Origin: Octopus sinensis
Lineage: Eukaryota
DNA length: 64,000 bases
Direction of reading: 5' to 3'
Assembly (NCBI RefSeq): GCF_006345805.1
Contig: NW_021832601.1
Coordinates: forward strand, 62,001 to 126,000
In this document: positions 9,066 to 48,160 of the stretch, in pieces
How the letters are laid out: every line of letters begins with the position of its first letter
Numbering within the stretch: the stretch's first letter is position 1
Notes under the pieces: generated by a model
The model's input: only the letters and a program-made list of their open reading frames with translations
Database searches by the model: none
Told to the model about the DNA's origin: nothing
Translations under genes and position numbers: made by a program

Positions 9066-9643
<578 letters not shown>

Positions 9644-24842: not shown

Positions 24843-25516
24843 ATCTAATTAGTCAGCTACAAAATTGCTATAGTCTATTCGAGAACGATTTTATTTCTGA
24901 AATTACATATACTTGATTATTGACGGCCAATATTAAAATCTGTGAATCAGATTTGTGAAAAGCCTTTTTATTATCATTTCACCCCATGATAACTAATAGA
25001 CTGAGTGATCACTACAAAAAAAACATTCACAACTAAGTAATCACAGACTTGTATGAGATGATTCGTGTCTTGCGGGAGCGACGGTTCAGTACTGCCCTTA
25101 TCATAGGGAATCGTAAGGTTCGTCTGTTTGACTGTTTTGAAGTATTCAGAGAAAATTTTCAATAAAGGCTTACAATAGAGTTAGATCTCTGACGAATTTT
25201 TTCTGCTTGTCAATATTCAGATCATCTATGGTGGTTGATTAAAAGCAATAGTAGTGAGAAACCTTTTCCGTGCATTCAAATGAATCTTATCAAAATTTTA
25301 TTCATAGACAAGTCTATAGACGTTTCTATGGAGTTTTTGATTTCAAATGTTATTTCCTTGGGCCTAAATTTTTAAATCATTTAACTTTTTGTGGTTGTGC
25401 ATGTCTAGGCATTTAGCACCGCATAAAAATATAATTTTATATTATGAATTGTTTAGTTTATACAATTGAAATATAATAATTAAAAACATAATTGAGTAAT
25501 TAATATCTATCTAGGT

Positions 25517-26055
25517 ATGCCTGTAATATTTTCTGTCATGATTGTTAATAAATACGGATCTCTACTCTATTTTTACGAAAAACCACAAAAAAACGTACTT
25601 GACAACATATCTAACGATAAGAGAATTCAAAAAGAAAAAATTCAGGTTTAAACAACATTTATACAAAACAGAATCATGCAATAACAGCGGAGTCTAATGG
25701 TCAGATTTCGCAGGCTAAAAATATGAAACTCTCTGACAACGAAAGAATAATAATGGCGAGTACAATGCATTCACTTTTCCACATAAGTTGTCAATTGGCT
25801 GGTGAAAACGTGGGAAACGGAATACAAGTCATTGAGTCTCCAAATGTTCGAGTTCACTGCTACCAAACTACTACGAGTCTTAAATTTGTAGTCGTATCTC
25901 AGCCAATAACGTTTCGTATACAACAGCTCATGACCAAGTTGTACATGATCTACGTTGATTTTGCCTTAAAGGACCCTTTTTATATTCTTGACATGCCTAT
26001 TACGTCTCAACTCTTTGAGTCTGCTGTCCACGCTGCACTGGATTTTTATTCATAA
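25517..26055 (+). CDS. TRAPPC4: TRAPP complex subunit 4 (Trs23/synbindin), 2 exons, about 170 aa
   Basis: VMIVNKYGSLLY..LSDNERIIMASTMHSLFHI..HCYQTTTSLKFVVV..LYMIYVDFALKDPFYILDMPI; 26-nt intron 25646-25671. Confidence 0.92.
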
Positions 26056-26534
26056 TGAATTTGTAAAGAAATTAACTTTTTAATTGTTTCAAGATGTAAA
26101 CTGATCTTTATGTTCTCCATATATTTATAATTTCAAATAAATAACTTTCATTTTGATAAGTTCTACACATTAGTATTTACGCATTTTAGGGTACTTTTTA
26201 GATTATAAAACAATGATTATTGCAACTAAAACTATATTCAATAGGAGATGTATTGCTTTTATTGTCATCGTCTTATAGTTGATCTTTTTACTGCCCTACA
26301 TTGTTTTTCTGAAAATGTTTTAAATGAATACAGTTCAGATTAATACATATTCCGTGATATATATCTTTCTCAAGGTTGAACTTAAAAAAGTTTGTTTTGT
26401 TGCTAAAAAAACTTAACAAATAAAACTCGAAATTATCAGTTTATGAACAACTCTTGTAATTTACGTTTAAATTTGACGTGATATTAATTTTTTAGATTTT
26501 TAATTAAAGAGCTAAAATTTGTAATAGTTAAAAT

Positions 26535-26960
26535 ATCAATTCTGGAACCGACTGGCCTTGTCCTTGAAGATGCAAAACGTCCAGACGGCTGTACACTTTT
26601 CGCTTTTGAATCCGGGAAGCAGCTCGTTTGGGACGTCACCTGTGCCGACTCTTTCGCCAAGGGAGCCTTGAATTCCACGGCTTGTCGACCCGGTTCGTCG
26701 GCCGAGAAGGCCGAATTCGCGAAACTAACGAAATACGAGGATTTACGCGATCGATTTTGCTTTTGGGCAATTGCCGTCGAGACTTGCTGTGTTTTTGGGG
26801 CCAAGACGCTTGCTCATCTTAAGAAACTTGGCCGTCTGTGCACCTATCGCTTCAGAGATCCCAGGGAATTTATATTCCTTATTCAGAGGATCTCGATGGC
26901 TGTTTTACGCGGGAATTGTCTTTCAATCCTGCGAGCCAGTACTTAATAGCTAGATTTTTT
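26535..26960 (+). mobile_element. CRE-clade retrotransposon 3' fragment
   Basis: LEPTGL..KRPDGCTL..LVWDVTCADS..FLIQRISMAVLRGNCLSI. Confidence 0.85.
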
Positions 26961-27095
26961 AATAATTCCATTAATAAAAAAAATTATTGTTAAAATATTT
27001 TTATAATAATATTTCATTGAATTGAAACTGTCTAAATAGTTTGGATAATCGTAAAAGTCGTTTAATAATACACTATTATTAATATTTGAAATAAT

Positions 27096-28951
27096 ATGTT
27101 TGGCGTTGTAAATCATGGAGTATACAATGATGGCCAAAATGTGGTCGTCTACAGCGGACACTTTATGGTAAGCACATTTGTCAACTTCAATTTAAATACA
27201 ACCAGTAATAGCTGATATTTTTATTTTGAGGTTTATCTTCCTTTCCCTATCATGTGCCCGACGTACCTCTTAACACTCTAATTGACTTTTTGTGGTGTAG
27301 TTATCGGTTTGTGTGTATTTTGCTTTCTATTCGAAGAGGCGTCTTGATTTCTTCAAAATGGAGAAATTTTACTGGTTATTCAATTCCAGGATGCCTTAAA
27401 ATTCGACTTAATAATGCAATTTGGAGAGAATGGTGCCGACAGAGTTATATTTAAATGTTTCTTTATTTCTTTAGATTACTACAATAAAAAGCCGCTGGTA
27501 TGTAAATTTAATGACAAGTTAAATGACATCCATCATGGAAAAAATGTTAATCTAAAACAATCATCTTAGAGCATTATTTTTGAGCAAAACTTTCTTAATA
27601 TGAAACCAACTCTGTTTCGCAAAGAATATAACAAACTGAGAAAGTATTTCTGTGAACGAATTAACGTTCAAATTTCATGTAACGAGAGCAATCAATTCGT
27701 TAGAATATAAATTCCTTAATTATTTGATAGGACGAGCAATCACAATTGACAGAAACTAAAACACCAACTATCTACGAAGATATTAACCTACCTCTATGTG
27801 ACGAAATTGACGGGATACAGAAACCAAATTATTTTTTTCCGAGAACATCATTCGACGACACTGATTTTTTTTCAAAACAACCTCATTATTTTGGAAATTA
27901 CAAGGCTGTCGAGTCTGACACAAAATACAAAAACACGCCGCAAAGAGATTTTACTAATCTTTGGAATCATCCAAATTGTTCATCTTCAAAAATATCACAA
28001 AATCAACAAGATTTTTCGAGAAATCATTTTGTGCCAAACTATAGTTACGGGTAAATAAATTAATGCCAATTGGGCGTGCCTAACCACATAAATTATAAAT
28101 TATAATTAACATTTAGAAATCATGTCATTGGACAACAAGAGTATAATTACCCTGGCTATCCAATGTTGTTTACTAAGGTTTCTTATTTTAGTAATTTTTA
28201 GCCATCGGTTTCTTGTTTTTCAGAGGAAGATCAACGAAAAAGGAAAAGACATATTATTCATTTAAAATCTGAAAAACACAGACGTAATGAAATTAAAGTC
28301 TATTAATCTGAAAAGATTTTATAGAATTGGATTCATACACTTTACCTGTGTATCAAAGACTCAAAAATAAATTCAAGTACCTGCAAACAGAGCTATGCAA
28401 ATATACTACGAGAAGGTACAGTCGACTATTTATCTGTTTAGCGTCAGACTTGTTAACCTGTAACCAGAATGAAATTTTAAAAAACGAAGCAAAACTAGAA
28501 GTAATTAAATCAGAAATCGAATCAAAAACTGAAAAAACGAGGTAATGATATAAATTTAAATACAAGATATCTGCAAGAATTGATTCCCGATGAATCTATT
28601 TCAAATACTGACATTGTGAAAAGAGAATATTCTGAATATTTAAAATATATTTATGACCGTTCATTAATTAATCAAAAATATGCATTATTTGGACTAATTA
28701 TGGAGAAAATGTTCAAGTCATTCATAGGTCAGAAAATGACTAATAATTCGAAAATAAATGATATAGAATCCTGGTTAAACGATAACGTCTCCCTCCAAAT
28801 GTCTAGAGAAGGTATTTAATTGTCATATTTGATAGATTCAATGCGCGTATTGCGAACATTTTCCAAAGATACCTCTATAATCAAAGATCCCTCTTTGCTT
28901 GGCAGCGAATCTATTCAAATTGTAAAAAATCTTATTGAAAAACACAAGTGA
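27096..28951 (+). CDS. MLXIP: Mondo/MLXIP (ChREBP family) bHLH-ZIP transcription factor, compact, multi-exon
   Basis: Mondo conserved regions VVYSGHFM, LISSKWRNF, KIRLNNAIWREW, KEYNKLRKYF; basic region RHIIHLKSEKHRRNEIK; DCD tail KYALFGLIMEKMFKSF..SWLNDNVSL..LRTFSKDTSIIKDP. Confidence 0.85.
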
Positions 28952-29393
28952 TTCAAAATAATCATATATTCTTACTTTATTATTTTAATCACAATGTAAA
29001 TAAAAATTTATTCATTTTGAGGTTTTAGAAAAATCAAACATGTTTATTAGCCAGGATAATCAATTACATTTTTTTAAACCATAATAGTTATTTGATCTTA
29101 GAAAAACGCGCTTGTGTACTTTTGCTGATCTGGAACTACTGGTTTCAAAATAATATTTAATCAGAAGGTTTCCAACCTCGACTGACAGGTCCAAATGGTT
29201 CGAGCATTAAAAGAAATCCGGACGCAACTATTGCTCTCTTCACAATTTGTTACGAATTCCTTCAAAAATGTATATATCACTTTTTGATTAAAAAAATTTA
29301 GAAATTCATTAAGTGTAATAAAACATTAAATAACCATATAATTGAATAAACCAATACAACTATGCGAAAATTATTATAAGAAACAGAACAAGA

Positions 29394-31797
29394 TCATTTA
29401 TTATTTATTCCAGCTATCTTGGACTGTGTCTCAAATACCAATAACCTCCACAATTTAATCACAAAAACTTCTGCCTCGTTATCAAAAATCTATTAAATAT
29501 CTCACAAAAAAAGCACCGTCCAAATATCTTTAACCAAACTTGTCGGAGATGTCTGAGATAAAAGCTTTTCACATATAAAGTCGTTCAAACTTGGTTCTTC
29601 CTCTCCGATATACTCAATAATCTTCTTATTTACCCAACTACGAATGCGAGTATCGACAAGATTCTTGGAAAATTAAAACTTTAAAATACCTGATCGACCA
29701 CTGTCCAGTCAATTTCGACAGAAAACAATGATTCAGAATCAGTAGGTATCTTGTCAATAATTTGCCGAATCATCCTCTTCTTCTCCTCAGCAGAAATGTA
29801 TTTGAAATGATCAGTCATATCCAATTTTGGTTTCACGACTTCTGGTTTTACTTCGGGGACTTCCTCCTCCTCTTCCTCTTCAAACACTTGGAATGTTGAA
29901 AGGACCGGAGTTGTCTTTGCATCCGACGGAACTTCAAAGCACGTGGCAACTGGGGCCGTCGTTGTCGTTTGCGCATCTTAAATCACAAAAAATTAAATCC
30001 ACTTAGTTTTAGAGCCGTAAAACCAATTTGTTTATCTTCAATAACTTCGGAAACTTCAGTAAATTGGACAATGTCCTCTTCCTCGTTGTTAGTTAGATCA
30101 ACAGTTTCGCCAGGCTCTTCGTCTTCAGTTGTAGAAATGATTTCCTCTTCCACTTCTTTGTCTGTCAAATGTTTAAAAGCTCTCTTCTCGATCTTAAAAT
30201 GTAGATCATTGGGGAAAACCTGTACTAAACGTTCTTCGACATGTTTTCCTCCTCGTTCAACCACACTTCTCCTCATATCTTCCACTTCAGCTAATTCCCT
30301 TTCTCTATCTCTCTTATCCCACTCAATCTCACGATCACGTGCATGTATTAGTCTTGCCAATTGACTTCCTCTGAAAATAGTCACAATACATATCCAACTT
30401 GTAATATTTTCCGTCGTCTCGATCGTCATTGTAAGACATTAGAAAGTCATATTTATGCTTGGTATCTTTCATCTATAAACGGAATGTTACATCTAGAATA
30501 CATTCGACTTATTCCTCTCTTCTATCCGCTCAGCCTCCTTTTCAAATTCTTTCTTCTTCTTCCGTTCTCTTGATTCCCAATTCCGCAAACACTATCAGGA
30601 TTGACCGGGTAAATATATACATTAATATACGAGTTTTCCTTTTCCTGGGCTTCCCTGTCCAACCGAGTTTGTTCTTCCTCATCCTCAAGCTCACTGTTCG
30701 TAGTAATAAAAACAAAAAACCTTGAATTCCTTGACCTTTTAGACGCAGAACTCAATCCACAGTCATTGTCCTCCTAAATGGAAATATATAACAATTTCTA
30801 ACGAGATGCTTGTCCAGGGAACACACGTCCTTTGCTTCCCTTGCGTCCTAGTAGTTTACAGTAGTTTGTCTACCTTTCTCATATTTTTAATAGCGATTGG
30901 ATCTCCTGCAAGTACACCAGCATATTCTACGAGGAGTGCGTCAAACTCTGCCTTCACGGCAGCCATTTCTGCATTCATTGGAGGCTTCGACTCAACTTTG
31001 GGAATGGGGACTCCGGGCATTTTGTGCCTCATGTAATCTTCCAAATGATTCCGACTTTTAGAATTCACTTTGACCTTAAATGAGTATATCTAGACTACCA
31101 AAAGGGGTTTCCCCGCAATGACATATCCATTAAGAAGTCTGAGAGAACAAAGAGTAGACTCCGGGTGCTTGTAGTCACAAAATGCAAAAGCTATTCAAAA
31201 ATTTAGCACTAAACTCAATTACCTTGTAATTTACCAGCACTGGTATAAGTTCTCTTCCAATTAAGCACATTCCCACATTTCTAAAAATAAGATGAGTCAG
31301 CCAACCTCGGCCAATTGCCTAATAAGAGTATCTGGACAACATTCTGGAATGTTCCCAATAAAGACAGTAGTTGTAGTATACGGAATTTCCTTGAATATGA
31401 AATAATGAAAACTACCTTTGGAACGGCGTACTGCATTGGTTGAGACATGACAACGCCGAAATTAGGAGAAGGAGTCATAATTGGAGTTTGAACAACTGAA
31501 GGCTGAACTGGAGTAGGTATAAACGGTACTTGCATTGGCTACAATATAAACAATAGATCCCAACGTTTACTGGGGCAGGGACTCCGTAGGGAAGGAAACC
31601 TAACAAATTGTTAGCCAACATTAGAAATTATAATCTATAAGTTATCTAAATATGAAAATCTAATGAAACCTGAAGATTAAAAGCTAAAATTCTACAAATT
31701 TATAATTCCTGATAGTTTATAATTATTATTAAGAATTACCGGTATTGTATGAAGATGTCATTTGAGGTACACACGGAATACGATTAGGAAACGACAT
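29394..31797 (-). CDS. RBM25: RNA-binding protein 25 (RRM, E/R-rich region, PWI domain)
   Basis: EEKKRMIRQIIDKIPTDSESLFSVEIDWTVVD and WRLLVFETQSKIAGI (PWI); proline-rich N-terminus; many short GT-AG introns. Confidence 0.92.
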
Positions 31798-32185
31798 AAC
31801 AATCACAAGAACAATACACAACACGATATTAATTTAAATTAATATTACTTTACAAAATTAATAATTTATTTATATTTTACTTATACGTATGATAGTAGTA
31901 TAATAAAATTTTTAGTTACATTTTTGGAATCAAATATTTTTTTTAATAAATTAACAAGCACGTCGCAAATCCAGAGGCCCATAGATGTCAGCCACACAAA
32001 AATTCAAAAGCAAGAAAGAGAACAAGCAAGCTAATCATTTTAATCAATTCTGAATTGAGACGTGAATAAGTGTGCAGCTGGTGAAAAATTTAAATTAAAA
32101 TAAAATTAAAATTAATTCAATTTGATTTAATTTAAATGTTCTAAATTTATATGTTTTAAATTTAAATATACAAAATAAAATTCAG

Positions 32186-32520
32186 ATGGTTAAAATCGAA
32201 TTATATGGGTTGGTCATTATGTAAATATTTCATTAATTAGATCAGAAGAATGCGGAATTTTATTAGAGTTACAGGGTCAAGTCAAATTTGAGGATAAATG
32301 TAATTGTTATTTTTTTCTAGACAAAAATGTAAGTAATTTTTCTTCACTTTTAAAGGGTGTTCCTTACCTTGTAATGGGTCGTAAAATTTTAGTTGGACAA
32401 GCCAGTGAAGACGATATTAACATGGCTTTAATTTCTTGTGATTCCGGAAAAACACATTTTGTCGTAAAAAAGAAATTTATATTCAAGGATAAACCAATAC
32501 AAATACTAAAAAATAAGTGA
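32186..32520 (+). CDS. CHTF8: Chromosome transmission fidelity protein 8, head-to-head with RBM25
   Basis: MVKI..ILLELQGQV..GVPYLVMGRKILVG..VKKKFIFKDKPIQI. Confidence 0.75.
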
Positions 32521-32699
32521 TCTATTAAATTTTGCTCTATTTTGTATTTTTTTTGGTGTAAAATTTCGTAGAAATAGTTTATGTACCTAGGATGTTTTCA
32601 TTGAGGATCGTGTGATATTAACGGATCAATGATTTAGAAAAATTTTAAACATTATTATGCTTTTCCTACTATTAGGGACATTCTTATTCATTAGACTGT

Positions 32700-33339: not shown

Positions 33340-33959
33340 ATCTTTAAAGAGCAAGCACTCCTCCTCGAAACTCCTACCATTCTCGACGAATTCTATGATG
33401 AGAGCCGCACACATTTTTATGGCCTTTGCCACCTCTTGAAGAAACAAAACATCCCCTTTAAGATCGAATCCAAACTCTTTCGCGGTCTTGACTGTTACAA
33501 ACAAACCGTTTTGAAATCAGATCTGATGTTGTTGGTGCACAAAATACCATTGGTGCGGGAGGACGTTACAATGGGATTACAGTTATGCTCGGCGGCCCAG
33601 ATTTTCCTAGTATTGAATATTCCACTGGTATCGAACTAATCTTACAAACAATAAATAGGCAAAATGCATTCCTTTTCGTCTGTCTCATTCCTTTTATATA
33701 AAAAAAAGTTAAATCTGTATGTATTAAAGCACTGTATGAACTCCGACATGGAAAAAAACAGCTCAACTTACCTCTGCAAAAAATATAAAAAGTCCCTCAA
33801 GCTGCTAGTGATCTGGGAACTACTTTTTCTCTCATCCTTGTAGATGAAGAGCATTCAAAAAGACTTGTCCAAGTTAAAAATATGAAAACTCGAGACTCAA
33901 TTGAAATTCAATTAGAAGAGCTCACTTCTGTCCTCTTAAAAAATAGGAATAACAAATGA
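33340..33959 (+). pseudogene. hisS: Bacterial-type histidyl-tRNA synthetase, 3' half, intronless, frameshifted
   Basis: With one frameshift: [64 protein letters not shown], then anticodon-domain LVQVKNMKTR; stop at 33957-33959. Confidence 0.85.
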
Positions 33960-34956
33960 CCTTTGACTATAGAAGAACCACCTCTCTCACGTACTTAATA
34001 CAGCGATACAAATAAAAAACGGAACACTCATTTTCTCGATTTTTTTATTAAATGACTAGCTCGGCAGCTCGCTTCGCTCACCGCGACCTAGCTCCTGCGG
34101 AGGGCCTGTTTCATCAAACAACTATAAGTTTATGTATATGTATAAAACTACCTGGTTTAATGTAACCCTATTCTATCGCCTGTTGATAAACGATGTTTGT
34201 CGTCCGTCCTTCCTTGGCATATATGAATAAATTTTCTCTTCTGCCTACCCTCGAGCATCCCACATACAGCTGTCCATGTGAAAAGCACTCACTCTCTAAA
34301 AATAACCCAACTACCTTTAATGACTGTCCCTGGGCCTTGTTTATTGTCATTGCAAAACTCATCCTCAAAGGAAATTGCAGCCTTTTAAATCTAAATGGTA
34401 ATTCATCAGAAATTATCGGAATTCGTGGAATATAAACATCCTCACCTCTATACTTACCTGTTAATATCGTCGCCTCTATTACGTTAGGCATCAAATTTTT
34501 GAGAACTAACCCCGTTCCGTTGCATAATTTAGGTGGCGCAAGATTTCGTAATAAAACCACTGGAACGCCTATCTTTAACTTTAAAAGATGATTCGGCATT
34601 CCAGAGGGATCTAAGGAGTTTAAAAATTCAATCCGGTTGAATTTTTAGAAAATAACAAAAAAATAAAGAAAAACAAATAAAAATAAATAATTTAAAAACA
34701 AAAAAATAAAAAAAACTTTAAAAATTTGTAAAATAGTATAAACAAAAAAAATCTCTGCCGCCACGGCAACAACCAGTCTAATTTTTTAACAGCCAATTAA
34801 GATAATGTTTAAGAGCCTTTATAGTACGGAGATTTAGCTTAGTGACCTTGATTAGACAAACCACTGGCGGAAATGGGGCAGCCGGAGATGCGGCAGGCAG
34901 AGTAGCAGCAGCCAAAAAAGCGACACACAAAAAAGATTTAATTAATTACCTTAAGC

Positions 34957-36515
34957 CAGAGGTTTCCAAATGGGGAGGCGCGCCTCCCTAGGGAGGCGTT
35001 GACTCGTGTCAAGGGAGGCGCGAAAAGTATTTCAGAAACATTTTTTAGAAAATTATATCTATGTAAAAAACGTGACTATATTCCGATAATAAGAGTTATT
35101 AATTTAAAAATTATATTTTTTCAAAAATTTATTTAATTTATTAGACAATTAAATAATTTTAACACATGAATAAATTCTTGAGTGGTTGCAAAAGAAAATT
35201 CACGAATAATAAAGATTTTGACGATGGTTCAAAAAATCAAAATGATTGGAATATAATCAATACCACTCCAAAGACAAGAAAATACTTTCCATCTTACTTA
35301 TTGTTAGGATTCACACGTATCTTTGTTGATTCTATGGAAAAACCCCTCTGTTTGCTTTGCCTCAAAACACTTGCAGCAGATAGTATGAGGCCATGCAAAT
35401 TAAGAAGACATTTTGAAACGATGCATTCTGAACATGTCCATAAGTCTGAAGAATTTTTTAAAAGAAAATTAGAAGAGTTTGATAACCAAACGAAATCGTT
35501 AAAAAAACTTGTTTCTGTCTCTTCAAATGCTTTACTAGCATCGTACAAAGTTTCTTACAGGATTGCAAAATGCAAGAAACCGCACAATATCGGAGAAACT
35601 CTAGTTTTGCCAGCAGCTATCGATATGGTTGAAGCAATGTTTGGCGAATCCTATGCAAAACAATTACAGCAAATACCGCTTGCTGATAACACAGTCGCTA
35701 GAAGAATTGATGACATATCTGAAGATCTTTGTGATCAGTTGGTTTCTCGACTACGTAACTGTAAATTTGCTATACAAGTTGATGAGGGAGCTGACATAAA
35801 TAAAAATGCACATTTAATTGCATATGTCAGATATGCTGAAGAAAGTACAATAATAGAAGATCTATTATTCTGCAAACCATTTCCTGGAAGGAGCACGGCC
35901 AATGAAATTTTTAATATAATTGATACTTTTTTTGAAGAAAATAACATAGAATGGATCAATTGTGTTGGACTTTGTACAGACGGAGCACAGTCAATGTCAG
36001 GAAATAAATCTGGTCTTCAAGCTCTTGTAAAAAACAGAGCACCAGAAATTATCCGGACGCACTGCATGCTGCACAGATCAGCACTTGTCTCAAAGAATAT
36101 GAGTCCAGAACTGAACGATATTTTTGCGCAAATTACAAAAGTTATAAACTACATAAAACACAGTCGAAATTTGAACGGAATATGAAATTTTGTCGAATAA
36201 AGCAATGAAAGTTTTGTTGCCATTTGCTACTTCATATTTATGCGAAACTGGATTTTCTGCACTAGCTGCAATTAAATCTAAATATCGAACTCGTTTAGTA
36301 GTGACTAATGAGCTAAGAGTAGCACTCTCTGCGATGACACCAAGATTTGAAAAACTTTGCGCCAAGATGGAAAAAAAATTATCTCATTAACTTTTTGTTT
36401 TAAAAAATTGTTTTTGATAAAATAATAATTGTATTATATTATGGAATATAAAGGGAGGCGCAAGATTGTACTTTTTCTCTAAGGGAGGCGCGTAAAAAAA
36501 GCTTGGAAACCTCTG
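34957..36515 (+). mobile_element. Internally deleted hAT (ZBED8/Buster-like) transposon
   Basis: TIRs cagaggtttccaa / ttggaaacctctg; 8-bp TSD ccttaagc; ORF 35166-36185 (BED finger, AIQVDE, CTDGAQSM, HCMLHR) joined out of frame to LPFATSYLCETGFS. Confidence 0.95.
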
Positions 36516-36744
36516 CCTTAAGCTGACCGTTTTTTCTTCAGCTTCGTTTTTCCTCCTTCGGTTATCTATTTAAAAAATTATTTTTCAATAATAAAAAAGT
36601 TTAGGAAAAGAGGCATACCGAAAATAAATTCTATCTTTACGAAAAACTTAACTAAATAGTTAATATTTTTACGCAAATTCTTCTGATTGCGCTGTCAATT
36701 GGTGGTAAATTGTGTTAATGATTGTGCTAATGTGGTTTTAACTA

Positions 36745-38204
36745 ACAATATAATCCCCGCACTTTTTTCCCTTGGCCTGTCTATAAACCCTTCGAAATCT
36801 GAGATTTTTAACATCTCTTATGATCCCAATTATTTTAACACATCTATCTATCCATTATTTAATTCGCTTCTCCCTAATATCAAGGCTGTTACATCCTCTG
36901 ATCTTATTGTCCTTGGCTCCCCAATCTTTTCCTCGGCTATCCCTTCCTTCCTGGAGCTTAAGCTCACAAAAATACAAGAATCTATAGCCACACTTAAAAC
37001 AGTCGACGCACATGCTGCCTTCTTCCTGATCAAAAATTTCCTTGCTTTCCCCCGGTTACAATTTTTCTTACAGTCCGCCCCTTGTCACCGCCATCATTGT
37101 GCTCTTCAGCACTTCGATCTTTTGCTAAGAAACTCAATTTCGGCTAATACTAATGTCAATTTTGATGATGCCGGGTGGCAACAAGCGATCCTGCCAGTCC
37201 GTCACGGCGGACTAGGTCTGCAAGCTCCTTCTGTTTTGGCTCTCCCTTTCTACCTTTCTTCGTCATACCGCTGTAGTCCGCTTGTCCTTAGGATTCTTTC
37301 TCCCCATTCCGAATCCGTTCTGGACCAAGAGCTTTCTCATGGTATCGAAGTTTGGTCTTCCCGTGGCTTCGACATTCCTTGCTATCCCTGCTATACAAAG
37401 GCGTGGACGGAAACAATGTTTCTTCAGTTATACAATTCGCTATTATCCTCCTGTGATCAACACCGGCGCGCTTGTCTTTTGGCCGCATCCTCCGAATGGA
37501 GTGGCGCTTGGCTCAACGCATACCCTTCCGGAAATACGGGAACCCTGCTGGACCCAAAAAGTGTGCAGATTGGCATTTCTCTTAGACTTGGTCTGGACAT
37601 CTGCTTTCCACACACTTGCCGCTGTGGTTCTGTCGTAGATCGGAAAGGTCTCCATCCACTTTCCTGTCGCAAAAGCCCTGGCCGGATTCCCAGGCATTCT
37701 GAATTAAATTCCGTAGTAAAACATGCACTTGAAGCAGCCGGATTTCCCTGTCAGCTGGAGCCTCCTGGCCTTCTAAGGGAGGATGGTAAGAGACCTGACG
37801 GGGTCTCACTCTTTCCCTACAAGAACGGGAAAGCAATCGTCTGGGATGCGACATGCTCTGATACTTTCGCATCATCATGTCTTTCCTTGTCGGCGGTCGA
37901 GGCTGGCTCAGCAGCCAAGAGGGCGGAGACGAAGAAGGCATCTAAGTACGCCTCCCTGATGGACCGTTTCATCTTCGAACCGGTGTCAGTGGAAACTTCC
38001 GGTGTACTTGGCCCGTCTACTCTCCGTTTCCTCTCGAAGATCGGAAGGTCATTGGGAAGGCGAGGAACGACCCCCGTGAACTGATGTGGCTTTTTGAGCG
38101 CATCTCTCTCGCAGTTCTAAGGGGGAACTGTTCCTCGATCCTCCTCTCGGCTGCGGTTCCGCCTCTTAATTAGTGATTTCTTTACCTTATAAACTGTCAT
38201 TTAA

Positions 38205-38240
<36 letters not shown>
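36745..38240 (+). mobile_element. 5'-truncated CRE-clade non-LTR retrotransposon with 34-nt poly(A)
   Basis: LPVRHGGLGL, CRCG..HPLSC..RHSELN zinc knuckle, KRPDG..VWDATC RLE; short TSD aacta; one frameshift near 38065. Confidence 0.93.
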
Positions 38241-38242
<2 letters not shown>

Positions 38243-38494
38243 ATCAAAGTGTTTTTCAAAATCTGTTAATTGCACACTCTATTCAAGGTCGTGCAATCTG
38301 TAATTGCACATTCTGTCAAAGTCAAATATGATAATAGCTTTAATTTTGATTCATGGTCGATAATGATATATGCATTTAATTTTAAAGAGAAAATCATAGG
38401 ATGAATTGAATTTCTTTATCGCGAATAATTGGGAGTTCATCATTGTTAATATTCTCGCTGTCGTTTTCATCAAGGATATTCTTAATACGTTAGA

Positions 38495-38930
38495 TTTTTG
38501 CCTCGAAGGTTTTAATGGACCTCATTATGAATGTCGAGGACATTAACGTTGTTCATTTTAATCAAATGCAGAAAATAATTTTTTGATTTTTTGGCGGGAA
38601 GGTTTTAAGGACCTGATCATGTAAGTCGAGGACATCGTAGTTGTTCATTTTAACCAAAATGCAGAAAATTTTTTTTTAATTTTTTTTGGGGGGGAAGGTT
38701 TTAAGGACTTCATCATGTAAGTCGAGGACATTGTAGTTGTTCATTTTAACCAAAATGCAGAAAATTTTTTTTTAATTTTTTTTGGGGGGGAAGGTTTTAA
38801 GGACTTCATCATGTAAGTCGAGGACATTATAGTTGTTCATTTTAACCAAAATGCAGAAAATTTTTTTTTAATTTTTTTTGGGGGGGAAGGTTTTAAGTAC
38901 CTCATCATGTAAGTCGAGGACATCGTATTG
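38495..38930. repeat. About 93-bp tandem repeat (4-5 copies) near the Helitron 5' end
   Basis: Unit ggaaggttttaaggacttcatcatgtaagtcgaggacattgtagttgttcattttaaccaaaatgcagaaaatttt... Confidence 0.9.
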
Positions 38931-39211
38931 CCAATTTGAAGTTGGTGTGCACACACAGACAGACAGACAGACAGACAGACACACACCATACCATTTTATT
39001 ATTAAGATTGATTTATTTTAACAAAAATAGAATTTTTAGAAGACAAACATAACTTTAGCCTTTAAAAAAATAAAAACAACTTATATTTCGGACCGTAGTT
39101 AAATCCAGTTTTGTCCAAACAAAATAAAAAAGAGAACAAAATAAAATTCTCTATTTTTACAGAGTTTTTTAAACCACTTTTTATTTTATTACACGTGTTG
39201 ATTCTTGTTAC

Positions 39212-39859
39212 ATGGTTTTACAACTTACATTACAAGAAAAAGCAGAAATTATTACGTATTATAAAGTCGGAAAGTCATATCGGGAAATAAGAAATTTGAC
39301 CGGAAGATCTCTGAGTGCCATCTCGAGAGTCATTCGAAACTTCACCATGAATGATTCCTTCCAGAGAAAAAAAGGCTCAGGACGAAGATTTAAACTTAAC
39401 TCTGATGATCTCGGAATAATTCAACGTGAACAAAAGTTTGGAAAAGGGAACGTAATGGTTTGGGGCGCATTTACATCGAAATGTTTTTCGGAACTTGTTT
39501 GGATAAAGGGAATTATGAATGGGAACTTATATGTAAGTATCTTGGCGGACTATTTGTTGCCTTTTTTGGAGAAAACCGGAATCCGGTCTCCAATTTATCA
39601 GCAAGATAATGATCCAAAGCACACATGCAAGGTGGCTAAAGATTTTTTTGATGAACACCGAATTGAGTTATTACAATGGCTTCCTCAAAGTCCCGATTTG
39701 AATCCAATCGAGCACGTGTGGGCCTTCATGAAACATAAAATAAAAGGGACTGAATTTAAAAAAAAGAGTGACCTATTTGAGGAATTAAAAAATATTTGGA
39801 ATGATCTTTCAATAGAATATGCGACATCCCTTGTTGAACAATGCGGAACAGAATTTTAG
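39212..39859 (+). CDS. Tc1 transposase with in-frame internal deletion (215 aa)
   Basis: N-terminal HTH joined to VMVWGAF..YQQDNDPKH..PQSPDLNPIEHVW; second HTH and first catalytic Asp region missing. Confidence 0.85.
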   Translation: MVLQLTLQEKAEIITYYKVGKSYREIRNLTGRSLSAISRVIRNFTMNDSFQRKKGSGRRFKLNSDDLGIIQREQKFGKGNVMVWGAFTSKCFSELVWIKGIMNGNLYVSILADYLLPFLEKTGIRSPIYQQDNDPKHTCKVAKDFFDEHRIELLQWLPQSPDLNPIEHVWAFMKHKIKGTEFKKKSDLFEELKNIWNDLSIEYATSLVEQCGTEF

Positions 39860-40571
39860 ACGCAATTAATGCTCAGGGGGGTCATACTAAATTTTGAACT
39901 ACCATTGTTCTCTTTTTTATTTTGTTTGAAAAAAATTTGGTTTAAATACATATTAAAATCTTTGACGTTTGGATTTTTATAAAAGGCAAAAGTTAAGATT
40001 ATAGCTTGAAATTCGATTTTTTATTAAAATAAATCAATCATTCAATAGAAAAAAATCGAGAAAATGAGTGTTCCGTTTTTTATTTGTATCGCTGTAAATT
40101 CAATGTTGGATAGTCTGTTACTATTTCAGGTTGGATTCACTGCCGACGCGATCACGGTGGACTGTCTTTATTGACCCCCAATCATCTCAAATTTTCACGT
40201 TGCTGATAATGCTATAATGCAAGGATCGCTAATTTCAAATCGCTCCTTGTTTTTGCAATAAAGATCTTCTTTCCGATCGTCAGCACGAGTTTATTCTGCT
40301 TGATTTAGAAATGAGTTTTTCAACTCCGAAACACTTTAAAAAATCATTCATTATTGCCTAAAAGTTTTTTTCAAAAAGTGCCTCGATGTTAAGGTGCCGG
40401 ACACCATTTAAGAAATGACTCAAGCCGACTGTAGTGATATTATAAAATAGATCGTCCAATTGTCTCTTTTCCGCCTTGATGAAATTGCTAAAAAATGCAA
40501 GTTTCCTGTTTTTAAAGTGGAAGGAGACGGGATTGTTAAATGTATTTTTATCAAAGGTAGTGTATTTAAAG

Positions 40572-42796
40572 CAGGGGTCGGCAGGATTTTTGTCTTCGCG
40601 GGCCAAAATTTTATTTTTGTATGCGATCCGGGCCAAACGAGAAAAAATCCTTATCGGTCACAAAAATAAAGCAACGCTTGCACATTGCGATCTTTCTTTA
40701 TCAAGTTTTTTTTGCAACTTTCTTACGAAATAAAAATTTATCAGTTAAAAATGATTATAAAGAAGTGAATTTATTTTACTCATTAATCTGACTAGTTGCT
40801 AAACGTAATATATCGTTAAGATGTGAATCGGTAATCCTCGTTCTCAGACAATTTTTTACATTATTCATTTTAGAGAATAACTGTTCACATAAAAATGTGC
40901 TTCCAAATATACAAGCCATTTTCATAGCATTGTCGGTTAATTGCGGATATTTTCTGACACATACAAAATTTTTGTAGAAGCTCAAAATATCCATTTCAGA
41001 AAAATATTTTGATTTAAGTGTACTGTCGCATTGAATTTCAAGTAATTCCATTTGATAACACCCTGGTACTGTCTCAGTTTCAACATCAAATGGGATTGAA
41101 AAAATGTTGAAAAGATTTGTATGAGCCTAAAAAATTATATATGCGCATTTTACTCTTAAATCCATAAAACGTGATGAAAATTCTGATCTCAATTCCATAA
41201 CTATGTTTGCATATTCCGGAACATCAGTCGGATTCGTAGAAAGAAAATTCACAAAATGCGTCATGTTTCCTTTTTGTAACTGTAATTCCCACAACTTCAA
41301 TTTATTTTCAAAAGCAGTAATTTCGGCATACATTTGGTGTATAAATTTATTACTTCCCTGCAGTTTCAAATTTAAGTCATTTAGATGTGAAGTTATGTCT
41401 ACAAAAAATGCCAATTTGGAAATATTATCAGTATTTCGGAAATATGAAGCATCATAATTCTTTTCTTCAAGAAAAATTATAACATCTTCCCGTATATGAA
41501 AAAACCTTTTGAGCATTGATCCTCTACTAAGCCATCTGACATTACAAAAATATAAAAGATCCCCATATTCTGCTTCAGTGTCGATTAAAAATTGCCTGAA
41601 ATGCCGATGATTCAAGCCGCGGGATAAAATAAAATTTACTGCATTAACAACAGCATCCATTGTCTCACGTAACCTGACTGATTTGGCAACTAACGCCTCT
41701 TGATGAACAATACAGTGAATCTTAACCAAATTGTGCTCAATTCCAAATTTTTCCATTTCATTTTGGAGTAATGTAATAGTTCCCTTTTTGTTCCCAACCA
41801 TAGATGGAGCCCCGTCTGTTGTAACTCCAACTAATTTTGAAAGTGGAAGATTTAATTCTGTTAAAAGTTGCATTAAATGCAAGAAAACGTCGGTTCCTGT
41901 CACTGTACCCATAATTGGAATAACTTTGACAAATTCTTCAAAAATTTGGTATGCTTCAGTTATCCCTCGAACAAATATGACAAGTTGAGAAATATCTCTT
42001 CTGTCAGTACTAGTATCCAATGCGATAGAAAAATATTTGAAATTCCCAAAAATGTTTTTTAAAGAGTTATTTAAATCGAATGACATTTCTTCTACTCTTC
42101 TTGTTACCGTTCTTGGAGATAAACAGATAGATTCAAAAATGTTTCTTTTTGTAGGAAATAGATTTTCAGCTACTGCCATTAAGCATTGTTTTATAAATTC
42201 TCCGTCTGAAAATGGTTTCATTCGTTTCGCAATTATCTTTGAAATTTCGTAACTTGTACGTGGATATCATCTTTTTCACAACTCAAATTATTAAAAAATG
42301 TTGTTTGCTTTTGGTAATTTTGTTCGAGTCTCTTAATTTCCTTTAAGCGAGATTCTCCTGTAAACTTGCTGAATTTTTCGTAATGTCGAGTTTCATAATG
42401 TCGCTTGATGTTATAAAGTTTTTTGACAGCAACTTTTTCGAAACATATTAAGCATATACGTTTTCCATAATCCTCAATAAAGAAATATTCATGAGTCCAA
42501 TCTGGATTAAACGTACGGGTTTGAAGATCTTTAGTTCTTTTCGAACAATTCGGAATTCAAATTCACCACACAAAATTATTAACACGTTTATAAATTTATT
42601 TAATTTTTAATAATAGATAAAATGTATGTATAAATCTATATTACTAAAAGTCTAGTACTTTACTAAATTTGCCCGCGGGCCATGTTAGTTGGAAAAATTT
42701 GTCGGCAGGCCAATTTCCCTTAGTATTTGTTCGCGGGCCATTTTTAAATCTTCCTGGTCCTAATTTGGCCCGCGGGCCGCGATTTGCCGACCCCTG
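40572..42796 (-). mobile_element. Near-full-length hAT transposon (GTF2IRD2/SPIN-like transposase)
   Basis: TIRs caggggtcggca / tgccgacccctg; 8-bp TSD atttaaag; KPFSDGEFIK, SIALDTSTD, TTDGAPSM, HCIVHQ, VRWLSRG, FGSTFLCEQLFS; 1-nt frameshift near 42258; no clear ATG. Confidence 0.95.
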
Positions 42797-43559
42797 ATTT
42801 AAAGGTATTAACCGCTATAACTTTTTTGTCGGAAAGTTTTGTCTTGAAGGAGACGAGCAAATGGTCTGCAATCCAGCACAATAACTATTAAAAGACATTG
42901 AAACTTGTATGAATTCTGAAAGAGACCTTCTCATTTTTGCAGCGGTAGATGAAGCCACAGTCAACCAGGGAATGGAGCAACTCCGTCGCCTTGTTGCTCT
43001 GGAATGCAGCCTCATTGACTCCAATCGCTTTGAGTTTTTTTGGGTCGTTGACTTCTCTTTCTTCGAATGGAATGCAGATGAAAACAGTCTTACAAGCGTA
43101 CACCATCCTTTCACAATCCCCAATCCCAATGATTTCAAACTTCTCGAATCCAGCCCTCTAAAAATACAATTACAAGCCTATCACATCATTATTAGTGGGT
43201 GGAAGATTTCAAAGAATTTCAGATTCTCTACCTCATTAAAAAATCTTTAAAGCACTTAAAATCAGTGAAGGGATCTAAAAAGAATGTTTAGTGTTTTTCT
43301 CAAAGCCCTTCAATATGGGACACTCTGCATCCTTGAGTCGCAATCAGCTTCGATAGACTCATCATGATTCTGACTAAAACAGCAAAAATATTCGTGATAT
43401 CATCGTTTTCCCAAAAACGCAATTAATGATTCAGTGCTTTTCCTCTGTTATTCCTGGGAAGCTCCATGAGCTCGAGCTAGAAACTGAGCCCAAAAAATTA
43501 CTCGGATATAAATCGAGGATATTAAAGTTTAATTTTCAAGAGGATTTGATTAAGAGAAA

Positions 43560-44130
43560 TCAAAAGTATTTAACAAACTTACAAGTCACTTTCGAGTTTT
43601 ATTTGTTAGGTCTTTTACACTTAGTTATGCTACTGTAACCCAATGAAGAGAGGCTCCGCAGCCCAACAAGAGCCAAAGAAAGAGCAAGAAATCGATATTA
43701 ATAAAGTCTCTAAAGCTTTCGGTCATTTAATTGGTAATAACCTCGAAACTTTGGGATTTGAGTTAGATATCCAAAAAGTGATTTAAAGAATGAAAGACTT
43801 CCTCTGGAAGACTCTCCGAGTGTGTTCAAGCCACCTCAATTGTTCAGGAAGAAGCTTTTCAAAACCCCGCGAGCAAAAACCTAACTCAAGCAAATGAATT
43901 ACTTTCTACTAATGTTAGTCAAAAAGGAGTTATCAAACTTGAGAAACACAAACTCAATACCGCATTGAAAACGAGGAAAAGGCCTGCAAAATACAAAGTT
44001 CCAAGCGATGCAACTCTGCAATAGATTTTCCAAAGTGGTTAGGATAGCAGTTTTTTTCTTTATAAAAACACCTGAAATTTTAGTCTAATCTAAGAAGTCA
44101 AAGCAACAGTTGGAGCTTGTACTAACGAGT
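43560..44130 (+). pseudogene. mip: Mip-type FKBP peptidyl-prolyl isomerase, chlamydial-like, decayed
   Basis: IDINKVSKAFGHLIGNNLETLGFELDIQKVI..ECVQATSIVQEEAFQ..KNLTQANELL..GVIKLEK resembles the Mip N-terminal dimerisation domain; FKBP domain largely deleted. Confidence 0.75.
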
Positions 44131-46342: not shown

Positions 46343-48160
46343 TCATTGAGAATAATTTTGCAGAACTCTTGCTGATGGATCAGTAGCTGAGCACCATTTA
46401 GGCATCCATTGATACGGAATGACACTGGAGTTGTCTTTGTAATATTTTTCAAAAATATCTCTATAGTACAACGCTTCTTTGGTCAAAGGAGTGTTAAATG
46501 GATATTTTTCAGAAGCTTTAGCCAGCTGATCGTCTGAAATCTAAAATCACTGACAATATTTTAAACCTTATCTTCCAAATATTCTTGAATCATTGAATAC
46601 CAGGATCGTCTTAAGGAAGAAACACCGTCACTAAATGCTTCTTTTTTCCTCCAAAGAATTTCATCTGGCAAAAGCCCACGGTCACTAAAAGCCTGTCGCA
46701 GCAATTTTTTTTCAATGTCATTTTCACTTCCACGTCGGATGGAGGAAGAAAGTGATAGATAATACGCGGTAAATCGATGATCAAGAAAAGGTACCCTTAA
46801 TTCCAACCTCATCGTCAGATCAAAAAAAGTTACCCAGAGTTTGCAGTGGTCCTATCTGCTCTAAGTCCGTCGTACAAATAAATATCGTTTAACAGTCTTC
46901 GGGACTCTTTATCTGCTTCTTCTGCCGATGGGGCATTCTTAAAGTATAAATATCCTTGGCATAGTTCGTCAGAGCCTTCTCCCGACATAATAACGGCACA
47001 TTTGGAGTTTTCGGATATCCATTTGCTTATTAAATACATTGCTAAAAAACAAAATTAACAAAAAAGTAAAAAACCAGTAGACGCCCTCACCGTAGTTACA
47101 TCATAACTTTCTATACATTTAATCACCTCATCTAAATGGGATATTCCTTCTTCCTCTGTAAAGAGAATTTCTTTGTGACAACTTCCAATATGATTCGCCA
47201 TCAACCGTGCTGCCTCGACATCAGGACTTGCCTTCATTCCGATTGTGAAAGTATAGAGTTTTGCAGAACTGTCAACCCGTTTCAGTTCTTCATTCACTAA
47301 AGCTGCAATCAGACTCGAATCCAGTCCTCCAGAAAGAAGACATCCAATTTCTCTATCTCCCATCATTCTCTTAGCTACTGCTGACTGAAGTAAATTTCGG
47401 ATATTTTCCAATATTTCATTTCCTGTATGTTAAATATATCGATAAAACCTAAATTTTCGACTACCTCATCCATTGTCTTATAAAGCGGGAAATCCCCAAT
47501 ACTATGAAATTTGACAGAAGTAACAAATCGTGTTAGTCCTTCCTTATCTATACTATATTCTTGATAAAATCCAGGTTTTAAAGGTTCAAGAATAGCTTTA
47601 TCTTTTTTGAGTGAAACCAATCCTAGAGATTTAATGACACATATAACCTTTTAATTCTGAACAAACACCTAATTTACTTCCATCATACAAATAAAAAACT
47701 GGTCGAACACCAAATGTGTCCCTTCCAATGAATATTTTTCCTTCCAAAGCATCAAAAATACAAAAAACAAATTCCCCATCAAGGCTTTCAACTAATTTTT
47801 GTATCCCACCTTTTGCATATAGGTGAATCAAGACTTCAGAATCACATTTAGTTTTGAATTGAAAATCGTATTGAGATTCAAGCTAATAATAACAAATTAA
47901 GGTGAAAATACTTTTCTGTAGTTATATATTTCTCCATTGAATATTAAATGATAGTGGGGATATTCATTGAGATTCATTGGCTGCTTCCCGTAGAGAGAAT
48001 CAACTACTGCCAACCGATGAAAGCACATGTAAGCTTTTTTTTGTCTAGGGACTGTTTCAAAGCATGTCGAGTCTGGTCCTCGGTGGGATATTTTCATTGA
48101 AATATCAAAATATGACGACAAATCCCCATCAAAACCAAAAAGAGCCCATATTCCGCACAT
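46343..48160 (-). CDS. ASNS: Asparagine synthetase (glutamine-hydrolysing), multi-exon
   Basis: [87 protein letters not shown]. Confidence 0.97.

What the first reader, a model, noticed from the sequence alone, without database searches (positions are those of the whole stretch)
33340..44130. Fossil chlamydial operon (hisS-aspS-mip) integrated in an animal chromosome
Seen: after removing two transposon insertions, a contiguous intronless stretch encodes decayed HisRS, AspRS and Mip on one strand. The hisS stop overlaps the aspS start (ATGA at 33956-33959) with AGGA just upstream, which is bacterial translational coupling. Established: hisS-aspS-mip is the gene order in Chlamydia, and the Mip N-terminal segment (SKAFGHLIGNNL) is chlamydial-like. 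Frameshifts, stops and eukaryotic transposon insertions with TSDs argue against simple contamination. Inference: this is horizontal transfer from a past or present intracellular Chlamydiae symbiont (Rhabdochlamydia/Simkania/Parachlamydia-like), revealing a host-symbiont association not obvious otherwise.
Basis: partly seen in the sequence, partly recalled or inferred. Interest (0 to 1): 0.92.

Follow-up and report, generated by a model that had tools for sequence, protein, structure and literature searches.

The report
Decayed Simkania DNA inside octopus genome
A 2.3-kb dead fragment of a chlamydial (Simkania-like) genome, carrying pieces of hisS, aspS and mip, sits in an Octopus chromosome and was later cut by octopus transposons; it is a non-functional "genomic fossil" of a past intracellular infection of the octopus germ line.

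Summary
Window 33345-43971 (+ strand), with two transposon insertions removed, is one colinear piece of bacterial DNA. It carries the 3' half of hisS, aspS with a 471-bp internal deletion, and the 5' half of mip.

It aligns base for base with a 108-kb metagenomic chlamydial contig (L001) at 88-90% identity in aligned columns. Gene order, 4-nt hisS/aspS overlap and spacer are the same. In an AspRS tree it is sister to that contig (bootstrap 100%) inside the Simkania clade (97%). hisS-aspS-mip is syntenic in 70 of 81 chlamydial loci.

The host is Octopus: an ASNS exon is 99% identical to O. sinensis. An O. sinensis contig holds a second copy in the same flanks, with both transposon sites empty and with its own private deletions.

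The genes are dead. There are 18 frameshifting indels and 11 stop codons in frame. Differences are spread evenly over codon positions (13.5/10.1/10.1%, against 11.8/6.2/46.2% between two Simkania genomes). Change is AT-biased and deletions dominate.

So this is a real, non-functional bacterium-to-animal DNA insert. The kind is known (Wolbachia-type nuclear inserts). I found no report of this donor-host pair. Reads across the junctions, other octopod species and the rest of the genome could not be checked here.

The parts
33345..33958 (+). hisS pseudogene fragment. It covers HisRS residues about 220-430 of 430: the end of the catalytic core plus the anticodon-binding domain.
   Evidence: tblastn against L001 HisRS gives 69-71% identity, E 4e-72. 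DNA is 89.1% identical to L001 in aligned columns. There are 3 frameshifts and a stop at 33786. Pfam HGTP_anticodon scores 20.8 bits against a cut-off of 21.
33956..34000 (+). 5' end of the aspS pseudogene. Its ATG overlaps the hisS stop (ATGA at 33956-33959), with AGGA at 33945-33948.
   Evidence: Read directly from the sequence. L001 has hisS at 8712-10004 and aspS from 10001, the same 4-nt overlap. The DNA alignment runs through this point.
34001..40096 (.). Composite transposon insertion. A Tc1/mariner-type element with a duplicated TA holds nested Pif1/Helitron-like, hAT-like and RT-like pieces and about 100-bp tandem repeats.
   Evidence: 48-nt perfect inverted repeats at 33999-34046 and 40049-40096. 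The DDE_3 transposase at 39212-39859 and the Pif1_2B match are. The site is empty in L002. Parts recur at 53767-55265.
40097..40571 (+). Middle of the aspS pseudogene: residues about 16-42 and 200-352. A 471-bp internal deletion sits at about 40175.
   Evidence: tblastn. blastn joins L001 10126 to 10597 at window 40175.
40572..42804 (.). hAT-like transposon insertion with an 8-bp target-site duplication ATTTAAAG.
   Evidence: Terminal inverted repeat CAGGGGTCGGCA (I3). The site is empty in L002, with a single ATTTAAAG. The aspS frame continues across the join.
42805..43500 (+). 3' part of the aspS pseudogene: residues about 341-593 of 596.
   Evidence: tblastn gives 56% identity over 190 aa, E 2e-51, then 48% over 117 aa. 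Pfam tRNA-synt_2 matches the conceptual translation at 1.6e-33. Frameshifts and stops are listed.
43501..43565 (+). aspS-mip intergenic spacer inherited from the donor.
   Evidence: 48 of 54 aligned bases equal L001 11792-11848.
43566..43971 (+). mip pseudogene fragment. It covers residues 1 to about 142 of 266: the signal region and the FKBP_N part. The FKBP_C catalytic domain is absent.
   Evidence: tblastn against the L001 FKBP_N/FKBP_C protein gives 53% identity over 139 aa, E 2e-28. DNA is 90.4% identical to L001. There are 3 frameshifts and 2 stops. No donor-like DNA lies beyond 43971.
46561..48160 (-). Host flank: exons of asparagine synthetase (ASNS), separated by introns.
   Evidence: ORFs. 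One exon is 99% identical to the O. sinensis ASNS-like protein P0186; animal ASNS proteins are about 58% identical.
23883..32621 (.). Host flank. It is repeated at 55265-64000 at 99.5% identity and contains a Sybindin-family gene.
   Evidence: Self-blastn. Pfam Sybindin 6e-26. The second copy matches O. sinensis contig L002 with 1 mismatch in 5464 nt.

Best explanation
**What it is.** This is a non-functional nuclear insert of bacterial DNA.

**How it arose.** A fragment of about 2.9 kb came from a Simkania-like chlamydia, an obligate intracellular bacterium. It ran from mid-hisS through aspS to mid-mip. It was joined into an Octopus germ-line chromosome next to ASNS, most likely by end-joining repair of a chromosome break that captured DNA from a lysed intracellular bacterium.

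**What happened afterwards.** The fragment was never expressed as protein and has drifted neutrally.
- About 11% of its bases changed, mostly G/C to A/T.
- It suffered many small deletions and one of 471 bp.
- The locus then came to exist as two copies, either tandem paralogues or haplotypes.
- In the window's copy, a mariner-type and a hAT-type octopus transposon inserted into aspS.
- The other copy lost 1.3 kb.

**What is shown and what is inferred.** Shown: bacterial origin, donor clade, colinearity, inactivation, neutral decay, transposon insertions with empty sites, and host flanks. Inferred: the integration mechanism, germ-line infection as the route, and the age.
For: **Donor.**
- The AspRS conceptual translation hits P0001 best (E 9e-131, 61% identity). 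Simkania sp. and S. negevensis follow at 52-53%, other Simkaniaceae at about 45%, and non-chlamydiae at 34% or less.
- In the NJ tree the sequence is sister to P0001 (100/100) within the Simkania clade (97%).
- DNA aligns colinearly with L001 9371-10126 and 10597-12273.
- Identity is uniform: 89.1% in hisS, 88.0% in aspS, 88.9% in the spacer and 90.4% in mip. This points to one piece, transferred once.
- Synteny holds in 70 of 81 chlamydial loci. HisRS and AspRS both rank L001 first and the Simkania sp. MAG L012 second.

**Dead and neutral.**
- There are 18 frameshifting indels in the three genes and 11 stops in the donor frame.
- Differences per codon position are 13.5/10.1/10.1%. The control, L001 against L012, gives 11.8/6.2/46.2%.
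- GC-to-AT changes number 181 against 43 the other way. Deletions number 28 against 5 insertions.

**In the host chromosome.**
- ASNS has introns and is 99% identical to O. sinensis.
- The transposon target-site duplications and terminal repeats are intact. The transposon families recur elsewhere in the window.
- O. sinensis contig L002 holds the same insert in the same flanks, with both transposon sites empty and reciprocal private deletions.
- 178 changes are shared by both copies, against 17 and 28 private ones. Most decay therefore predates the split of the copies.
Against: - No raw reads or long reads were examined, so integration rests on two assembled sequences. Whether these come from independent assemblies is not known.
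- Presence in other octopod species could not be tested, so the age is uncalibrated.
- There is a clock tension. The extant L001 lineage shows only about 33 changes of its own, 22 of them at third positions. The insert shows about 190-260.
- Transcription as non-coding RNA cannot be excluded.
- Pfam does not recognise the Mip pieces on their own. That assignment rests on the match to the L001 protein and DNA.
Confidence: 0.9

Rival explanations
1. Assembly artefact. Reads from a chlamydial contaminant or symbiont were wrongly joined to octopus DNA.
For: Bacterial contamination is common in invertebrate assemblies. No read-level data were available here.
Against: - The bacterial genes are cut by two eukaryotic transposons with exact target-site duplications. 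One of them shares sequence with other parts of the window.
- Both genes next to the fragment's ends are truncated and no intact bacterial gene is present.
- Decay is neutral and drifts towards host composition.
- A second, structurally different copy lies in the same flanks in an O. sinensis contig.
Confidence: 0.02
2. The fragments are decayed copies of the host's own bacterial-type mitochondrial synthetase genes (DARS2/HARS2-like), not a transfer.
For: Mitochondrial AspRS is of the bacterial type (established knowledge).
Against: - DNA is 88-90% identical to a chlamydial contig across two genes, the spacer and mip. The operon order and the 4-nt gene overlap match as well.
- All best hits are Chlamydiota.
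- There are no introns.
- mip has no mitochondrial counterpart.
Confidence: 0.01
3. A domesticated transfer. The fragment, or part of it, now serves the host as a protein, a regulatory element or a non-coding RNA near ASNS.
For: It lies about 2.6 kb beyond the last ASNS coding exon seen (46561). The locus has been kept in two copies.
Against: - There is no open frame. The fragment has 18 frameshifts, 11 stops and truncation at both ends.
- Differences are spread evenly over codon positions.
- The two copies tolerate a 1.3-kb deletion and 8.3 kb of transposon insertions.
- Divergence between the copies in the insert (2.1-2.6%) equals that of the adjoining host DNA (2.3-3.3%).
Confidence: 0.04
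4. Indirect transfer. The bacterial piece was carried in by a mobile element or a virus, for example by Helitron capture, and not by direct uptake from an intracellular bacterium.
For: The left edge abuts the tail of a retroelement-like ORF (32929-33306). Helitron-like sequence lies nearby and at the junction of the duplicated unit.
Against: - The Helitron-like sequence sits inside the later mariner-bounded insertion, which is absent from the second copy. It therefore arrived after the bacterial DNA.
- No terminal element structure brackets 33345-43971.
- No other copy of the bacterial piece is seen away from this locus in the data at hand.
Confidence: 0.05

Closest known systems
Wolbachia nuclear inserts and 'genomic fossils' in arthropods and nematodes (for example Dictyocaulus viviparus, PMC4046930; filarial nematodes, PMC12693587)
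   Same: DNA of an intracellular bacterium is integrated in an animal germ-line genome. It is fragmented, pseudogenised and evolving neutrally. It can be read as a record of a past association.
   Different: - The donor is a chlamydia (Simkania clade) rather than an alphaproteobacterium, and the host is a cephalopod mollusc.
- Only one 2.3-kb fragment is seen here, against up to about a megabase in those cases.
- No evidence was found here of a known octopus-Simkania symbiosis.
The hisS-aspS-mip gene cluster of Chlamydiota, as in metagenomic contig L001 and Simkania sp. MAG NZ_OZ244056.1 (L012)
   Same: Order, orientation, the 4-nt hisS/aspS overlap and the spacer length all match. DNA is 88-90% identical to L001.
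   Different: The octopus copy is truncated at both ends, lacks 471 bp of aspS, is full of frameshifts and stops, and is cut by two eukaryotic transposons.
Nuclear copies of mitochondrial DNA (NUMTs)
   Same: The likely mechanism is the same: capture of organelle or endosymbiont DNA at a chromosome break, followed by neutral decay.
   Different: The source is a foreign bacterium, not the host's own organelle.
Chlamydial genes in plants and algae (PMC2376095)
   Same: A chlamydial donor and a eukaryotic nuclear recipient.
   Different: Those genes are ancient, intact, expressed and functional. This fragment is dead and far younger.

Membership tests
Bacterium-to-animal nuclear DNA insert (non-functional 'genomic fossil') | The sequence is of bacterial origin by similarity and phylogeny. 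| tested here: met
   It is sister to P0001/L001 (bootstrap 100%) inside the Simkania clade (97%). DNA is 88-90% identical to L001.
Bacterium-to-animal nuclear DNA insert (non-functional 'genomic fossil') | The insert is physically continuous with host DNA on both sides. | tested here: met
   It is continuous in the window. ASNS with introns lies on the right and a Sybindin-family gene on the left. O. sinensis contig L002 shows the same flanks. Read-level support was not testable.
Bacterium-to-animal nuclear DNA insert (non-functional 'genomic fossil') | Host-side events happened after integration, such as transposon insertions. | tested here: met
   Mariner-type and hAT-type insertions carry target-site duplications. 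Both sites are empty in the second copy.
Bacterium-to-animal nuclear DNA insert (non-functional 'genomic fossil') | Loss of function and neutral evolution. | tested here: met
   18 frameshifting indels and 11 stops. Differences are spread evenly over codon positions, unlike the bacterial control. Substitution is AT-biased and deletions outnumber insertions 28 to 5.
Bacterium-to-animal nuclear DNA insert (non-functional 'genomic fossil') | Single reads span the junctions, and read depth equals that of the host. | not testable with these tools
   No read data are reachable.
Chlamydial hisS-aspS-mip cluster | Gene order and orientation are hisS, aspS, mip on one strand. | tested here: met
   One search gives the order in the window. 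One search finds synteny in 70 of 81 chlamydial loci.
Chlamydial hisS-aspS-mip cluster | Complete genes: HisRS 430 aa, AspRS 596 aa, and Mip with FKBP_N plus FKBP_C. | tested here: not met
   Only HisRS 220-430, AspRS lacking about residues 43-199, and Mip 1-142 without FKBP_C are present. It is a remnant of the cluster, not a working member.
Class II aspartyl-tRNA synthetase, bacterial type | A match to the catalytic-core family. | tested here: met
   Pfam tRNA-synt_2 matches the conceptual translation at 1.6e-33, 116.6 bits.
Class II aspartyl-tRNA synthetase, bacterial type | The GAD insertion domain and the N-terminal OB anticodon-binding domain are recognisable. | tested here: inconclusive
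   Pfam reports no GAD or tRNA_anti-codon hit. The region still aligns with P0001, which has both domains. Most of the OB domain falls in the 471-bp deletion.
Functional (domesticated) horizontally acquired gene | An intact reading frame under purifying selection. | tested here: not met

The most novel reading that the evidence does not exclude
The donor lineage may still be alive and tied to octopuses. The metagenomic Simkania-like organism L001 has barely changed at synonymous sites relative to the donor. It, or a close relative, could be a present-day cephalopod-associated, germ-line-accessible chlamydia. The octopus genome would then hold further inserts from it. That would reveal a chlamydia-cephalopod association I found no report of, with ongoing DNA transfer.
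Probability: 0.15. Interest if true: 0.7.

Novelty: new member of a known kind. Interest (0 to 1): 0.5.

Why it matters
**What it records.** Integrated bacterial DNA is among the few lasting traces of past intracellular infections of animal germ lines. Nearly all well-studied cases involve Wolbachia and other arthropod or nematode symbionts. A Simkania-derived fragment in an Octopus chromosome implies that a chlamydia once had access to cephalopod germ cells. The library searched holds no report of such an association.

**What it can be used for.**
- The fragment gives a marker locus for dating that contact across octopod species.
- The donor is almost identical to an extant metagenomic lineage. 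The fragment can therefore help calibrate substitution rates in environmental chlamydiae against an animal neutral clock.

**Limits.** It is small and dead. It adds no function to the host and no new mechanism.

Tried and rejected
**Exact-protein look-ups.**
- I tried to find the window's own source, or other octopus assemblies, with window ORFs 29983-30429, 42909-43250, 33310-33639, 41127-42221 and 35166-36185. None is on record.

**Third protein search.** I spent it on the Sybindin-like ORF, hoping to reach orthologous loci in other octopods. No candidate came back. The cross-species test was therefore not possible.

**Local hypermutation of the foreign DNA.**
- It was raised because the two copies differ by 2.4% in the insert against 0.57% in the flanks.
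- It is rejected because the high-divergence block spans 32.9-45.5 kb and includes host DNA on both sides. Nearly identical sequence lies beyond it.
- The mutation spectrum is strand-symmetric and shows no CpG or TpC context effect.
- The pattern fits a mosaic produced by gene conversion or recombination.

**Other dead ends.**
- More donor DNA beyond the ends: nothing aligns above shuffled controls. No other L001 gene is found in the window.
- Cluster look-up for sample accessions of the closest relatives returned none.
- For metagenome 3300018080 only the principal investigator's name was recoverable.
- CHTF8 on the left flank is not supported by Pfam or PDB searches.
- Ranking Mip relatives by summed tblastn bits was muddled by frameshifts. 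The DNA alignment was used instead.
Full report
**1. The observation**

The + strand between 33345 and 43971 holds recognisable remains of three bacterial genes.

I translated the genes of the closest bacterial contig, L001, and searched them against the window by tblastn.
- HisRS residues 221-430 lie at 33346-33956, at 69-71% identity (E 4e-72).
- AspRS residues 16-38 and 200-593 lie at 40096-43500, at 48-78% identity (E down to 2e-51).
- The FKBP_N/FKBP_C protein (Mip) residues 1-136 lie at 43566-43955, at 53% identity (E 2e-28).
- The first 15 AspRS codons lie at 33956-34000. They start at an ATG that overlaps the hisS stop (ATGA, 33956-33959), with AGGA at 33945-33948.
- None of the other 16 genes of L001 has a match anywhere in the window.

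- 34001-40096 is bounded by perfect 48-nt inverted repeats that include a duplicated TA. It carries a DDE_3 (Tc1/mariner-type) transposase and nested Pif1/Helitron-like and other elements.
- 40572-42804 ends in CAGGGGTCGGCA repeats and is flanked by the 8-bp duplication ATTTAAAG.
- When each element plus one copy of its duplication is removed, the AspRS reading frame continues across the join (hand-checked).

**2. Where the DNA came from**

A conceptual AspRS translation, with X at each frame change, was searched against 5.8 billion proteins.
- The best hit is a metagenomic protein, P0001, at E 9e-131 and 61% identity.
- Simkania sp. and Simkania negevensis follow at 52-53%.
- Other Simkaniaceae and Chlamydiia MAGs reach about 45%.
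- Non-chlamydial bacteria appear only at 34% or below.

In a bootstrapped NJ tree of 68 sequences over 393 columns, the octopus sequence is sister to P0001 (100%). It sits inside a clade with S. negevensis and Simkania sp. (97%).

P0001 lies on a 108-kb contig from JGI metagenome 3300018080. That contig has ordinary bacterial neighbours such as dnaE and secDF. It has hisS at 8712-10004, aspS at 10001-11791 (the same 4-nt overlap) and an FKBP_N/FKBP_C gene at 11849-12649.

At the DNA level the spliced octopus sequence aligns colinearly with L001 9371-10126 and 10597-12273. Identity in aligned columns is almost the same everywhere: hisS 89.1%, aspS 88.0%, spacer 88.9%, mip 90.4%. This is what one transferred piece would show.

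A scan of species-representative bacterial genomes returned 80 loci, all Chlamydiota by title or PVC-labelled MAGs. With L001 that makes 81 loci, of which 70 keep the order hisS-aspS-mip. The nearest named genome is the Simkania sp. MAG NZ_OZ244056.1 (L012). HisRS and AspRS both rank L001 first and L012 second.

No donor-like DNA is detectable left of 33345 or right of 43971. The retained fragment is therefore 2298 nt, net of transposons. It corresponds to about 2.9 kb of donor sequence minus a 471-bp internal deletion and smaller ones.

**3. The genes are dead and drifting**

Relative to L001, the three genes carry the following damage.

| Gene | Frameshifting indels | Stop codons in the donor frame |
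|---|---|---|
| hisS | 3 | 1 |
| aspS | 12 | 8 |
| mip | 3 | 2 |

Several in-frame deletions come on top of these.

The differences from L001 are spread evenly over codon positions: 13.5%, 10.1% and 10.1% at positions 1, 2 and 3. Over the same sites, the two bacterial genomes L001 and L012 differ by 11.8%, 6.2% and 46.2%, which is the signature of purifying selection. Nearly all of the 11.3% divergence (258 of 2293 aligned sites) is therefore neutral change on the octopus branch.

Other features fit neutral decay in an AT-rich host.
- G/C-to-A/T changes outnumber the reverse 181 to 43, and deletions outnumber insertions 28 to 5.
- G+C has fallen from 43.7% to 37.1%. The surrounding host DNA has about 30-36%.
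- The spectrum is strand-symmetric and shows no CpG or TpC context effect.

**4. It is in an octopus chromosome**

To the right, on the minus strand, lie exons of asparagine synthetase separated by introns. One exon is 99% identical to an O. sinensis ASNS-like protein. Other animals reach about 58%.

The O. sinensis contig that encodes this protein is VCDQ01004829.1 (locus L002). It contains the same bacterial insert between the same flanks. In L002:
- both transposon sites are empty, each with a single TA and a single ATTTAAAG;
- window 43105-44413 is deleted;
- 16-bp and 43-bp stretches are missing;
- 17 bp that the window's copy has lost are still present.

Each copy thus has private lesions. 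They share 178 derived substitutions, against 17 and 28 private ones. Most of the decay, and so the integration, long predates their split.

These facts rule out contamination or a chimeric join for practical purposes.

**5. Relation of the two copies**

Window 23883-32621 is repeated at 55265-64000 at 99.5% identity, right up to the window's end. A Helitron-like piece (53767-55264) sits at the junction.

L002 matches the second repeat with one mismatch in 5464 nt. It continues into the transposon-free insert about 0.6 kb past where the window stops.

The simplest reading is a tandem duplication of about 31.4 kb covering the Sybindin-like gene, the insert and ASNS. The window shows unit 1, and L002 shows unit 2. 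A duplicated haplotype in the assembly is not excluded.

Divergence between the copies is a mosaic.
- It is about 2.5% in a block from 32.9 to 45.5 kb, which includes host DNA on both sides of the insert.
- It is close to zero beyond that block.

This fits gene conversion or recombination. It also disposes of the idea that the foreign DNA mutates faster than its surroundings.

**6. Mechanism and age (inferred)**

The likely route is the one accepted for Wolbachia inserts and NUMTs. DNA released from an intracellular bacterium in a germ-line cell is captured during repair of a chromosome break. Nothing in the sequence tests this directly.

The left edge abuts the tail of a retroelement-like ORF (32929-33306). 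No element structure brackets the insert.

The insert has about 11% neutral change. That is roughly nine times the per-lineage divergence of the two copies. Without presence/absence data from other octopods I cannot give a calibrated age.

One oddity remains. Polarised with L012, only 33 changes fall on the L001 branch, 22 of them at third positions. The extant bacterial lineage has hardly moved while the insert decayed by 11%.

**7. Comparison with what is known**

In kind, this is a bacterial nuclear insert or 'genomic fossil', as described for Wolbachia in nematodes and arthropods (PMC4046930, PMC12693587; found). It meets the features I could test: bacterial phylogeny, host continuity, post-integration host events and neutral decay.

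It is a remnant of the chlamydial hisS-aspS-mip cluster and not a functional member of it. It is not a domesticated gene.

Searches of the paper library found no report of chlamydial DNA in cephalopod genomes, nor of a Simkania-cephalopod association. That library omits most subscription journals.

**8. Verdict**

The donor is narrowed to the Simkania clade and the host identified as Octopus (O. sinensis or a very close relative). This is a new member of a known kind.

Interest is moderate. It is a clean, well-dated-in-principle trace of a past chlamydia-cephalopod contact. It is small, non-functional and mechanistically ordinary.

Noticed in passing
window 23883-32621 and 55265-64000; junction at 53767-55264: An 8.7-kb stretch is repeated at 99.5% identity, up to the window's end. 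A Helitron-like piece sits at the junction. This suggests a tandem duplication of about 31.4 kb, or a duplicated haplotype, that includes the insert and ASNS. O. sinensis contig L002 matches the second unit with 1 mismatch in 5464 nt.
   Followed up: partly
L002 12967-14498 (O. sinensis VCDQ01004829.1): This is a second copy of the bacterial insert. It has no transposons and lacks window 43105-44413, that is, the aspS 3' end and all of mip. Its aspS start is mutated from ATG to ATT. By inference it begins about 0.6 kb beyond the window's end.
   Followed up: yes
window 32900-45500 compared with L002: Divergence between the two copies is a mosaic. It is about 2.5% in a block around the insert that includes host flanks. 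It is close to 0% from 27.2 to 32.5 kb and at most about 1% from 45.5 to 49.5 kb. A further hot bin lies at 50.0-50.4 kb, with 18 differences in 360 sites.
   Followed up: partly
L001 against window 33345-43971: The extant metagenomic Simkania-like lineage shows only about 33 changes of its own since the donor (22 at third positions), while the insert accumulated about 11%. Either this chlamydial lineage has a slow clock or the octopus neutral rate is fast.
   Followed up: partly
window 34001-40096: A mariner-type element has 100% identical 48-nt terminal repeats. It holds nested Pif1/Helitron-like (34168-34599), hAT-like (35166-36390) and RT-like G+C-rich (36687-38084) pieces, plus about 100-bp tandem repeats at 38495-38930. 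Parts recur inverted at 53767-55265.
   Followed up: partly
window 25723-26055 and 57097-57429: A Sybindin-family (TRAPP subunit) ORF (Pfam 6e-26) found no word-sharing relative in the 5.8-billion-protein search. That is odd for a conserved eukaryotic protein and probably reflects a gap in what the database covers.
   Followed up: no
It has an acidic, charged C-terminal ORF of 148 aa. It has no Pfam or PDB match, so its identity is not established.
   Followed up: partly
loci L016-L019, L023, L025-L027, L059: Several genomes titled 'Verrucomicrobia' or 'Verrucomicrobiae' carry the chlamydial hisS-aspS-mip arrangement, and their AspRS is 63-69% identical to P0001. For one such sequence (P0051, labelled a Verrucomicrobia MAG) the AspRS tree places it among chlamydial sequences. 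These records may be mislabelled Chlamydiota MAGs.
   Followed up: no
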